From the NCBI RefSeq assembly GCF_006345805.1, contig NC_043015.1, positions 8,742,001-8,806,000 of the forward strand: a stretch of 64,000 nucleotides of DNA, given 5' to 3'. Position 1 is the stretch's first letter; each line of letters starts with the position of its first letter. Position numbers and translations under genes: made by a program. Shown piece after piece: positions 36,740-37,571 of the stretch. The notes under the pieces were generated by a model. It ran no database searches. It had not been told where the DNA came from and saw only the letters and a program-made list of their open reading frames with translations. The DNA is from Octopus sinensis. Its lineage: Eukaryota.

Positions 36740-36970
36740 TATAATTATTCAATATAGGGTGGCAAAAAATTTCGTAGAATTTTTTTTGCCACCAGCGGCC
36801 TAGTGGGAAAAAATTAAGTAGTCATAGACCATTTATAAGTTCAACATCACAATCAAGGAACGGCCATAATAGGCCATTTACCCACTAGAAATAACAGCCA
36901 AAGCTTCAACCGCAAAACAACATTAATTCCGCAAACCAGGAGAAAGTTAAAAAAACATTTACCCTGTAGT

Positions 36971-37073
36971 TTCTTATACGATGCACCGTTTCATCTATTG
37001 TTTAATGGTAAACTAACCTGATTAAATTAAATCAAGCTAATCTTCCATAGGCCGATAGATTCGTCAGTAAGAA
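36971..37073 (-). ncRNA. Type I hammerhead ribozyme (minus-strand copy)
   Basis: Reverse complement of 37271-37373; neither arm mismatch falls in this interval. Confidence 0.8.
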
Positions 37074-37270
37074 CAGCCAGATCTACGAAATTTTTTGCCA
37101 CCCTATATTGATTAATTATGAATTTTCTGGTTAGTTCCGTAATGGAATCGGCGGCTTATATTTGCTGCCGATAAATTTGGCGCGAGTGCGATGATTTGAA
37201 AATTTTAGGTCAGATATTGCCGAGGCAGGGATAGAAGTGCCTCGTGCAAATATCTGCTCCGATCTGGCTG

Positions 37271-37373
37271 TTCTTACTGACGAATCTATCGGCCTATGGA
37301 AGATTAGCTTGATTTAATTTAATCAGGTTAGTTTACCATTAAACAATAGATGAAACGGTGCATCGTATAAGAA
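37271..37373 (+). ncRNA. Type I hammerhead ribozyme
   Basis: Stem I TTCTTA/TAAGAA, core CTGACGA, stem II ATCTAT/ATAGAT, GAA, stem III ACGG-TGCA-TCGT. Predicted GUA cleavage after 37367. Confidence 0.82.
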
Positions 37374-37502
37374 ACTACAGGGTAAATGTTTTTTTAATTT
37401 TCTCCTGGTTTGCGGAATTAATGTTGTTTTGCGGTTGAAGCTTTGGCTGTTATTTCTAGTGGGTGAATGGCCTATTATGGCCGTTCCTTGATTGTGATGT
37501 TG

Positions 37503-37571
<69 letters not shown>

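What the first reader, a model, noticed from the sequence alone, without database searches (positions are those of the whole stretch)
36741..37503. Young fold-back element carrying two intact, divergent hammerhead ribozymes
Seen: 243-bp arms with 2 mismatches, each holding a complete type I hammerhead (CTGACGA core, 6-bp stems I and II, near-palindromic stem III, GUA site), pointing outward. A 38-bp terminal motif ATAATTA(T/A)TCAATATAGGGTGGCAAAAAATTTCGTAGA is present in both orientations. The spacer has two more hairpins (~37148-37172 and ~37211-37256). There is no ORF, and (TA)n lies on both flanks. Inference: a non-coding, retrozyme-like PLE satellite element; a transcript from either strand would contain one ribozyme and could form long dsRNA.
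Basis: partly seen in the sequence, partly recalled or inferred. Interest (0 to 1): 0.8.

Follow-up and report, generated by a model that had tools for sequence, protein, structure and literature searches.

The report
Head-to-head hammerhead retroelement copies in (TA)n
Two facing partial copies of a small non-coding retroelement, each carrying a hammerhead self-cleaving RNA motif, sit in a (TA)n microsatellite of what is probably a cephalopod genome; this layout is typical of Penelope-like retroelements, so it is a clear example of a known kind of element and not a new one.

Summary
The arms are 243 bp with 2 mismatches (36841-37083 and 37261-37503). A 38-bp motif occurs in both orientations, the spacer has two hairpins, no ORF exceeds 26 aa, and (TA)n lies on both flanks. 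Each arm carries a complete type I hammerhead motif. My descriptor found none in 500 shuffles of the window. Rfam does not report the motifs, even at E<=10.

The motif has an atypical A10.1-U11.1 pair and a 56-nt insert in helix II. Cleavage activity is untested.

The whole object can be read as two head-to-head partial copies of one ~484-nt tandem or circular unit. They meet at a 2-nt overlap, and both 3' ends face outward into (TA)n. This matches published Penelope-like element (PLE) insertion architecture.

The context supports a PLE link. A third, more canonical hammerhead lies 120 bp away in another (TA)n-bounded unit. A partial-tandem unit follows it. Two PLE copies with a CX4CxxC linker and GIY-YIG endonuclease lie at 17.4-20.3 kb and 23.8-25.0 kb, both next to (TA)n.

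I found no other copy of the family and no sequence link to those PLEs. The 'fold-back element' and 'terminal motif' labels do not hold.

Verdict: new member of a known kind, moderate-to-low interest.

The parts
36686..36740 (.). Left (TA)n flank, the presumed target microsatellite
   Evidence: TRF; sequence
36741..36778 (-). 38-bp motif M. On the - strand it is the 3'-terminal 'tail' of the left copy (TCTACGAAATTTTTTGCCACCCTATATTGAATAATTAT).
36758..36793 (.). Hairpin GGTGGCAAAAAA...TTTTTTGCCACC, 17 nt from the left outer end
   Evidence: sequence; Rfam alignment display
36779..36840 (-). Segment V (62 nt), present only in the left copy, between the arm and the tail
36841..37083 (-). Left arm (243 bp), the left copy of the shared segment. 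It holds a hammerhead.
36971..37073 (-). Left hammerhead motif (type I): C3 at 37067, cleavage after A17 at 36977
37079..37084 (.). AGATCT palindrome at the head-to-head junction. The two copies overlap by 2 nt (37082-37083).
   Evidence: sequence; coordinates
37082..37119 (+). Second copy of motif M, in sense orientation. It forms the 5' end of the right copy.
37120..37260 (+). Segment U2 (141 nt, the 'spacer') with two hairpins (about 37148-37173 and 37211-37256). It is present only in the right copy.
37261..37503 (+). Right arm (243 bp). It holds a hammerhead.
37264..37380 (+). Right hammerhead motif (type I) with its stem I extension. Core CUGACGA at 37277-37283, GAAA at 37352-37355, cleavage after A17 at 37367.
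37465..37486 (+). Hairpin GAATGGCC-TATTAT-GGCCGTTC, 17 nt from the right outer end
37504..37575 (.). Right (TA)n flank
37576..37905 (-). Neighbouring ~330-bp (TA)n-bounded unit of a different family. Its more canonical type I hammerhead spans 37712->37605: CUGAUGA, G10.1-C11.1, GUC site at 37622, palindromic helix III.

Best explanation
The 763-bp object is the product of one retrotransposition event of the Penelope-like-element (PLE) type into a (TA)n microsatellite. It is not a fold-back transposon.

It consists of two partial cDNA copies of a single non-coding unit of about 484 nt, in the order U2-Arm-V-M, with one type I hammerhead per unit.
- The right copy (37082-37503, + sense) reads M-U2-Arm.
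- The left copy (37083->36741, - sense) reads Arm-V-M.
- The two 5' ends meet head to head at a 2-nt overlap inside an AGATCT palindrome.
- The two 3' ends face outward into (TA)n, each 17 nt past a hairpin.

Both copies run through the hammerhead cleavage site, and the right copy runs through the M/U2 junction. The template must therefore have been longer than one unit or circular: an uncleaved tandem transcript or a religated circle, as in animal retrozymes and PLE pseudo-LTRs.

Inferred mechanism: a PLE reverse transcriptase/GIY-YIG endonuclease cut both strands of the (TA)n tract and primed reverse transcription from both. In the element's RNA life cycle the hammerhead would process multimeric transcripts into monomers.

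Shown: the anatomy, the motif statistics, and the PLE copies nearby.
Inferred: the unit, the template form, the dual priming, and ribozyme activity.
For: 1. Anatomy. Arms, motif M, junction and flanks are as described. Every base of 36741-37503 is accounted for by two contiguous stretches of one circularly permuted unit and a single junction.

2. Hammerheads. All invariant core positions and all three helices are present in both arms. My descriptor found no hit in 200 shuffles at (5,5,3) or in 500 at (5,5,2), against 3 observed in the window. The hammerhead-constrained fold lies within about 2 kcal/mol of the MFE, and the MFE itself forms helices I and II.

3. Inferred unit. The 483-nt version folded (one base shorter at the ambiguous (TA)n boundary), treated as a circle, is far more structured than shuffles (MFE -148.4 kcal/mol, z = -5.8, GC 38%). 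Retrozyme circles are described as highly self-paired and low in GC (PMC7229834).

4. Published PLE hallmarks match. These are 5'-truncated copies, an inverted 5'-truncated copy next to the 5' end, a 30-40-bp tail at one end, a (TA)n target preference linked to the CX2-5CxxC linker, and hammerheads in pseudo-LTRs (PMC8557442). A purified PLE protein cleaves and extends both DNA strands and starts reverse transcription internally in a stem-loop (PMC11167929).

5. Local context.
- A second, more canonical type I hammerhead lies in the next (TA)n-bounded unit, 37576-37905.
- The unit after that, 37958-38879, is a partial tandem A-B-A, which is pseudo-LTR-like.
- A PLE lies at 17410-19790 (+). [quoted passage not shown]
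- A second endonuclease remnant lies at 23780-24235. The two endonuclease domains match at E = 4e-13.

6. Host. It is an animal, probably a cephalopod. Hammerhead_1 hits are already reported in a squid genome (PMC6962438).
Against: - No second copy of the family was found anywhere: not in the window, nor in the viral, metagenome or prokaryote-genome scans. The ~484-nt unit, the V-M-U2 junction and any covariation in the ribozyme are therefore untested.
- The unit shows no sequence similarity to the 3' regions of the two PLE copies in the window, so no autonomous partner is identified.
- The extra 3' segment of the left copy is 100 nt (V+M), not the 30-40 nt of a classical PLE tail. On this model the right copy started reverse transcription internally.
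- Rfam hammerhead models give no hit.
- The 10.1-11.1 pair is A-U. G-C is described as highly conserved there (PMC4209133).
- Cleavage activity is untested.
Confidence: 0.6

Rival explanations
1. A solo copy of a hammerhead-bearing retrozyme or pseudo-LTR unit inserted in (TA)n and was later partly duplicated in inverted orientation at the DNA level. One route would be replication template switching or break repair at the AGATCT palindrome. The retrotransposition machinery would then not have made the inversion.
For: - The junction sits in a 6-bp palindrome with 2-nt microhomology.
- The arms are nearly identical, as expected for a recent duplication.
- Only one locus is known.
Against: - A DNA-level inverted duplication would copy contiguous DNA. 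Here the two copies are different windows of a circularly permuted unit: M sits at the 5' end of one copy and at the 3' end of the other.
- Both outer ends abut (TA)n.
- Head-to-head copies are a documented product of PLE insertion (PMC8557442).
Confidence: 0.15
2. A miniature inverted-repeat DNA transposon occupies 36741-37119, about 378 bp with 38-bp terminal inverted repeats and a possible TA target duplication. It carries a captured hammerhead and lies next to a fragment of a related copy.
For: - The 38-bp motif frames 36741-37119 in inverted orientation with one mismatch.
- TA dinucleotides can be read on both sides of a 36-bp version of the repeat.
Against: - It leaves the 243-bp right arm and its exact abutment to (TA)n unexplained.
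- No transposase-related sequence or other copy was found.
- The neighbours in the same microsatellite cluster show retroelement-type architectures.
- The hammerhead plus (TA)n association is a PLE trait.
Confidence: 0.1
3. The hammerhead-like motifs in the arms are catalytically dead relics, or active only as dimers or with protein. The locus would then be an inert retroelement remnant whose main potential output is hairpin dsRNA.
For: - The 10.1-11.1 pair is A-U, helix II has a 56-nt insert, and Rfam gives no hit.
- PLE hammerheads show low activity in vitro (PMC4209133).
- The Anolis PLE hammerhead cleaved only with protein and was not needed for insertion in vitro (PMC11167929).
- In a full-length transcript the 243-bp hairpin (whole-object MFE -518 kcal/mol) would compete with ribozyme folding.
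Against: - All invariant core nucleotides are present.
- Helices I and II are 6 bp each, and helix III has 4 bp and is near-palindromic.
- The ribozyme fold is close to the MFE.
- None of the three arm/motif differences falls in the ribozyme, though there are too few differences to show selection.
Confidence: 0.3
4. The inversion is an assembly artefact, produced by a fold-back or chimeric read.
For: Inverted repeats and PLE structures are known to trouble assemblies (PMC8557442). Reads could not be examined.
Against: - The arms differ at 2 positions.
- Unique segments (V and U2) flank the junction asymmetrically.
- The structure is internal to a 64-kb window.
- It matches a known biological architecture.
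Confidence: 0.04

Closest known systems
Insertion structures of endonuclease-containing Penelope-like elements (Neptune/Nematis/Hydra/Naiad type): pseudo-LTRs with hammerheads, an inverted 5'-truncated copy, a 30-40-bp tail, (TA)n targets (Craig et al. 2021, PMC8557442; Frangieh et al. 2024, PMC11167929)
   Same: - Head-to-head partial copies with 3' ends facing outward.
- A hammerhead roughly 50-240 nt from the 3' end.
- A 38-bp motif present at one end only.
- (TA)n on both flanks.
- Ends that lie next to stem-loops.
- PLE copies with the CX4CxxC linker in the same window.
   Different: - No RT/EN coding sequence in or next to the object.
- No detectable similarity to the untranslated regions of the PLE copies in the window.
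- The one-sided extension is 100 nt, not 30-40 nt.
Animal non-LTR retrozymes (Cervera & de la Pena 2020, PMC7229834; Li, Clavereau & Pollet 2026, bioRxiv 10.64898/2026.07.22.740005)
   Same: - Non-coding, low GC (38%), with a type I hammerhead.
- The unit is a few hundred nt and predicted to be highly self-paired.
- The template was evidently longer than one unit or circular.
- PLEs co-occur in the genome.
   Different: - There is no direct tandem array here; the two copies are inverted and each is shorter than one unit.
- The inferred unit (484 nt) is above the 150-450 bp range reported.
- Helix II carries a 56-nt extension, and 10.1-11.1 is A-U.
- circRNA is untested.
Canonical metazoan type I hammerheads (Rfam Hammerhead_1, RF00163; for example the 235 hits in the giant squid genome, PMC6962438)
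   Same: Same core (CUGANGA ... GAAA ... UH), an open helix I of 6 bp followed by an internal loop, and a short near-palindromic helix III.
   Different: Not detected by the Rfam models. Helix II is 6 bp plus a long branched extension, where 4 bp plus a small loop is typical. No recognisable loop 1-loop 2 contacts.
Foldback (FB) elements / MITEs
   Same: Long inverted repeats, no coding capacity, AT-rich target.
   Different: The inverted repeats are not terminal on the left. The 38-bp motif is missing at the right end. The two halves are permuted windows of one unit and not symmetric arms.

Membership tests
Hammerhead ribozyme, type I | Invariant core: C3 U4 G5 A6 N7 G8 A9, G12 A13 A14, A15.1-U16.1, H17 not G | tested here: met
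   CUGACGA / GAAA / U16.1 / A17 in both arms; CUGAUGA / GAAA / U / C17 in the neighbouring unit
Hammerhead ribozyme, type I | Three helices around the core, with helix I open-ended | tested here: met
   Helix I 6 bp (plus 3 bp beyond a 4x4 loop), helix II 6 bp, helix III 4 bp. No hit in 200 shuffles at (5,5,3) or in 500 at (5,5,2).
Hammerhead ribozyme, type I | Conserved G10.1-C11.1 pair at the base of helix II | tested here: not met
   A10.1-U11.1 in both arms. The pair is met in the neighbouring hammerhead at 37694->37622. Its conservation is stated in PMC4209133.
Hammerhead ribozyme, type I | Score at or above the Rfam gathering threshold for a hammerhead covariance model | tested here: not met
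   No hammerhead hit at gathering score or at E<=10. The 42-56-nt helix II inserts are the likely reason, but I could not test this.
Hammerhead ribozyme, type I | Compensatory changes in the helices among homologues | not testable with these tools
   The two arms are identical across the motif, and no other copies were found.
Hammerhead ribozyme, type I | Site-specific self-cleavage | not testable with these tools
   Needs in vitro transcription or RNA end mapping.
Penelope-like element (insertion product or non-autonomous derivative) | RT plus GIY-YIG endonuclease ORF | tested here: not met
   No ORF over 26 aa in 36741-37503, so at most a non-autonomous derivative or a UTR-only truncation. 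PLE ORFs exist elsewhere in the window.
Penelope-like element (insertion product or non-autonomous derivative) | Hammerhead motif in the repeated terminal region | tested here: met
Penelope-like element (insertion product or non-autonomous derivative) | Inverted 5'-truncated copy adjoining the 5' end (head to head) | tested here: met
   Two copies with 5' ends at 37082/37083 and 3' ends facing outward. The feature is described in PMC8557442.
Penelope-like element (insertion product or non-autonomous derivative) | Optional 30-40-bp tail at one end | tested here: inconclusive
   The 38-bp motif M is at the left end only, but the one-sided extension relative to the right copy is 100 nt (V+M).
Penelope-like element (insertion product or non-autonomous derivative) | Insertion into (TA)n or AT-rich targets | tested here: met
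   (TA)n on both flanks. The same holds for the neighbouring units and the PLE at 17.4-20.3 kb.
Penelope-like element (insertion product or non-autonomous derivative) | Sequence homology to the pseudo-LTR/UTR of an autonomous PLE | tested here: inconclusive
   No similarity to the 3' regions of the two PLE copies in the window. The rest of the genome was not available.
Animal non-LTR retrozyme | Direct tandem repeats (150-450 bp) with a type I hammerhead in each unit | tested here: not met
   The copies are inverted, each is shorter than one unit, and the inferred unit is 484 nt. A tandem or circular template is inferred only.
Animal non-LTR retrozyme | Expression as self-paired circular RNA | not testable with these tools
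   Only a prediction is available: circular fold z = -5.8.
Foldback transposon / MITE | Inverted repeats at both termini plus a target-site duplication | tested here: not met
   The right terminus lacks motif M, and the left arm ends 100 bp inside the left terminus. No duplication can be discerned within (TA)n.

The most novel reading that the evidence does not exclude
The locus is a genomic footprint of a cephalopod retrozyme family with an unusual hammerhead (A10.1-U11.1, 56-nt helix II branch). Its ~484-nt circular or multimeric RNA was copied by a Neptune-like PLE enzyme priming on both strands of a cut (TA)n tract at once. That would be in vivo evidence for two things: the dual-strand priming so far seen only in vitro (PMC11167929), and PLE-mediated retrozyme mobilisation from a template longer than one unit.
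Probability: 0.3. Interest if true: 0.5.

Novelty: new member of a known kind. Interest (0 to 1): 0.3.

Why it matters
Hammerheads in Penelope-like elements and animal retrozymes are well described, so the class is not new. Three points still give the locus some value.

1. It shows hammerhead variants with long helix II branches that the Rfam models miss. Rfam-based counts in cephalopod genomes, such as the 235 hits in giant squid, may therefore be underestimates.

2. The permuted, head-to-head layout is a clean single-locus record that fits two-strand priming on a template longer than one unit. The mechanism of PLE/retrozyme integration is still unresolved.

3. In 2.2 kb, three different (TA)n-bounded units show the three classic PLE architectures: inverted pair, solo copy and partial tandem. 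That makes this a handy natural test set.

Tried and rejected
- Rfam, whole window at gathering score and local scans at E<=10: no hammerhead hit.
- Search for more copies. BLAST of the object against the window found only itself. Exact-pattern scans of viral contigs, metagenome contigs and prokaryote genomes found nothing. The three matches are unrelated bacterial hairpins.
- Spurious-ORF trick: a protein search with the 70-aa ORF of the neighbouring unit, meant to reach contigs of the same species, found nothing.
- Contigs fetched through LINE and PLE protein homologues (L001-L003, L007, L008) hold no copy of the family.
- Homology between the unit and the neighbouring hammerhead unit, the A-B-A unit, or the 3' regions of the two PLE copies: not above shuffles. 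A shared 12-mer, ATAATTATTCAA, at 36741 and 37889 is suggestive only.
- Helitron reading (hairpin near an end, AT target): rejected, because there is no CTRR 3' end and no fitting 5' TC context.
- Bacterial promoter/terminator scan: not meaningful for an animal genome.
- PDB sequence search for the PLE ORFs: uninformative.
- Plant origin, which I first suspected from the zf-RVT domain: rejected. The best named relative of the LINE RT is from a cuttlefish, and a SINE piece is shared with contig L003.

Full report
**1. Checking the observation**

- The true arms are 36841-37083 and 37261-37503, 243 bp, with two mismatches at 37398/36946 and 37465/36879. The repeat finder's 258 nt at 97% includes 15 nt of chance extension.
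- A 38-bp motif, M, occurs at 36741-36778 (+) and 37082-37119 (-) with one mismatch. It occurs nowhere else in the window.
- The 141-nt spacer holds two strong hairpins, and its fold has z = -4.4.
- No ORF inside the object exceeds 26 aa.
- (TA)n tracts lie at 36686-36743 and 37503-37572.

**2. The hammerhead motifs**

Each arm has the full type I layout on its outward-reading strand.
- Helix I: UUCUUA/UAAGAA, extended by 3 bp beyond a 4x4 internal loop.
- Core: CUGACGA.
- Helix II: AUCUAU/AUAGAU, enclosing a 56-nt branch that forms its own long hairpin.
- GAAA.
- Helix III: A-U, C-G, G-C, G-U with a UGCA loop. The helix is near-palindromic, so a dimeric extended helix III is also possible.
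- Cleavage site: GUA, after 37367 on the + strand and after 36977 on the - strand.

I wrote a descriptor that allows helix II spans up to 90 nt.
- In the real window it finds these two motifs and one more.
- It finds none in 200 dinucleotide-preserving shuffles at the (5,5,3) setting, and none in 500 shuffles at (5,5,2).
- The window holds 28 CUGANGA heptamers.

The hammerhead-constrained fold is within about 2 kcal/mol of the MFE. For the 119-nt version the MFE already contains helices I and II. The motif is therefore real and not a chance match.

Three cautions apply.
- Rfam's hammerhead models do not report it, at gathering score or at E<=10.
- The 10.1-11.1 pair is A-U, where G-C is highly conserved (PMC4209133).
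- The two arms are identical across the motif and no homologue was found, so covariation cannot be tested.

**3. What the object is**

Its second copy sits at the inner end of the left arm. Read in the ribozyme's sense:
- the right half (37082-37503) is M-U2-Arm;
- the left half (37083->36741) is Arm-V-M.

These are two contiguous windows of one circularly permuted unit, U2(141)-Arm(243)-V(62)-M(38), about 484 nt in total. They are joined head to head with a 2-nt overlap inside an AGATCT palindrome (37079-37084). Both 3' ends face outward into (TA)n. Each outer end lies 17 nt past a hairpin (36758-36793 and 37465-37486).

Both copies cross the cleavage site, and the right copy crosses the M/U2 junction. 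The template must therefore have been a multimer or a circle. The 483-nt version I folded (one base shorter at the ambiguous (TA)n boundary), treated as a circle, is much more structured than shuffles (MFE -148.4 kcal/mol, z = -5.8, GC 38%).

**4. Fit to published knowledge**

Craig et al. 2021 (PMC8557442) describe PLE insertions as follows:
- 5'-truncated copies and partial tandems that form pseudo-LTRs;
- often an inverted 5'-truncated copy at the 5' end;
- a 30-40-bp tail at one end;
- a (TA)n preference linked to the CX2-5CxxC linker;
- hammerheads in the pseudo-LTRs.

Frangieh et al. 2024 (PMC11167929) showed three further points for a purified PLE protein.
- It cleaves and extends both DNA strands and starts reverse transcription internally in a stem-loop.
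- The tail is the stretch between two start sites.
- The hammerhead needs protein and is dispensable for insertion in vitro.

Animal retrozymes are non-coding tandem units of 150-450 bp with type I hammerheads. They are expressed as self-paired circles and are thought to be PLE-dependent (PMC7229834; bioRxiv 10.64898/2026.07.22.740005).

The locus matches the PLE insertion architecture closely. It matches the retrozyme concept only in part, because there is no direct tandem array here.

**5. Context in the window**

- Next door, 37576-37905 is a separate (TA)n-bounded unit. Its - strand carries a more canonical type I hammerhead: CUGAUGA, G10.1-C11.1, a GUC site at 37622, palindromic ACAUAUGU as helix III, and again a long helix II branch.
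- Next, 37958-38879 is a partial tandem A-B-A between (TA)n tracts. A is 364 bp at about 98% identity, and the period is about 556 bp.
- At 17410-19790 (+) two overlapping ORFs encode a PLE. [quoted passage not shown] Pfam matches are only weak. (TA)n lies upstream at 17339-17408 and downstream at 20303-20394.
- A second endonuclease remnant at 23780-24235 passes the Pfam GIY-YIG threshold and aligns with the first at E = 4e-13.

PLEs with the (TA)n-associated linker are therefore present in this genome. None of their 3' regions resembles the hammerhead units, so no partner is identified.

**6. Host**

- The LINE reverse transcriptase at 52238-53140 has a cuttlefish protein (Acanthosepion pharaonis, 53% identity) as its best named relative.
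- A tRNA-like SINE at 32238-32395 is 92% identical to part of a JGI contig that also encodes a PLE endonuclease 58% identical to the window's.
- From memory only, that SINE resembles the abundant Octopus SINE. I therefore take the host to be a cephalopod, possibly an octopod.
- Hammerhead_1 hits are already reported in a squid genome (PMC6962438).
- A 21-kb sample of cuttlefish DNA held a hammerhead-like motif abutting (TA)n. Its Rfam score was below threshold, at 18.9 bits.

**7. Rivals**

- *DNA-level inverted duplication of a solo copy.* This is possible, but it does not explain why the two halves are permuted windows of one unit that both end in (TA)n.
- *A 378-bp MITE with 38-bp inverted repeats.* This leaves the right arm unexplained.
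- *Misassembly.* This is unlikely given the two mismatches and the asymmetric unique segments, but reads were not available.
- *An inactive ribozyme.* Independently of the architecture, the ribozyme may be weak, may act only as a dimer, or may depend on protein.

**8. Verdict**

- The retrozyme/PLE link is the best reading.
- 'Fold-back element', 'terminal motif' and 'intact' are overstated.

This is a new member of a known kind. Two features are mildly interesting: the hammerheads escape Rfam, and the layout fits dual-strand priming on a template longer than one unit. Interest is 0.3.

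Noticed in passing
window 37576-37905 (- strand; hammerhead 37712->37605): A third hammerhead, outside the finding's coordinates, in a separate ~330-bp (TA)n-bounded unit. It has CUGAUGA, G10.1-C11.1, a GUC site at 37622, palindromic helix III (ACAUAUGU), a 42-nt helix II branch, and a long helix I (5 bp + loop + 9 bp). Rfam does not detect it.
   Followed up: yes
window 37958-38879: A partial tandem A-B-A (A = 37958-38321 and 38514-38879, about 98% identical; B = 38322-38513) bounded by (TA)n on both sides, which is pseudo-LTR-like. 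The - strand of each A holds a degenerate hammerhead-like core (CUGAUGA at 38290->38284 ... GAAA-CGUACG-UU around 38258->38246) with poor helices I and II.
   Followed up: partly
window 17410-19790 (+), flanks 17339-17408 and 20303-20394: A near-complete Penelope-like element in two overlapping ORFs, implying a frameshift near 18318-18477. [quoted passage not shown] It is GC-rich (about 52%) in an AT-rich genome and sits between (TA)n tracts. Pfam matches are only weak. Its 3' region holds a hammerhead-like remnant with a mutated core, CTGTTGAAGAGCGTAGGCTCGAAACGTT, at about 20173-20200.
   Followed up: partly
window 23780-24235 (+), extending to about 25030: A 5'-truncated PLE remnant with only the linker and GIY-YIG endonuclease (Pfam PF01541). 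Its 3' region ends at a long (TA)n/(TG)n tract. The only database relative is a JGI metagenome protein at 58% identity.
   Followed up: partly
window 51189-54605 (-) and about 58200-62200 (-): Two LINE copies carrying Exo_endo_phos, RVT_1 and zf-RVT domains. Each is about 77-78% identical in DNA to an ENA metagenome contig (L001).
   Followed up: partly
window 32238-32640, 45050-45480, 25330-25600: tRNA-like SINE copies, each split by or adjoining (TA)n/(TG)n microsatellites. One piece is 92% identical to the end of JGI contig L003. ARAGORN calls no tRNA in the window. The resemblance to the Octopus SINE is from memory only.
   Followed up: no
window 33242-35901: About 2.6 kb of back-to-back trinucleotide arrays (ATA, ATT, ATC, GAT, GAG, GAA, AAT). 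They produce spurious long ORFs and strong GC and AT skew.
   Followed up: no
L007 14864->14832 (- strand), Acanthosepion pharaonis contig CAHIKZ030005532.1: A compact hammerhead-like motif (CUGAUGA-GCUGU-GAU-ACAGC-GAAA..GUC) about 12 nt from a (TA)n tract in cuttlefish DNA. Rfam gives only 18.9 bits, to Hammerhead_3. It hints that (TA)n-associated hammerhead elements are common in cephalopods.
   Followed up: partly
window 36741-36752 and 37889-37900: The 12-mer ATAATTATTCAA occurs only twice in the window: at the left end of the object and near the (TA)n-proximal end of the neighbouring hammerhead unit. About 0.09 matches are expected by chance. It may be a shared end motif of two families.
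   Followed up: partly
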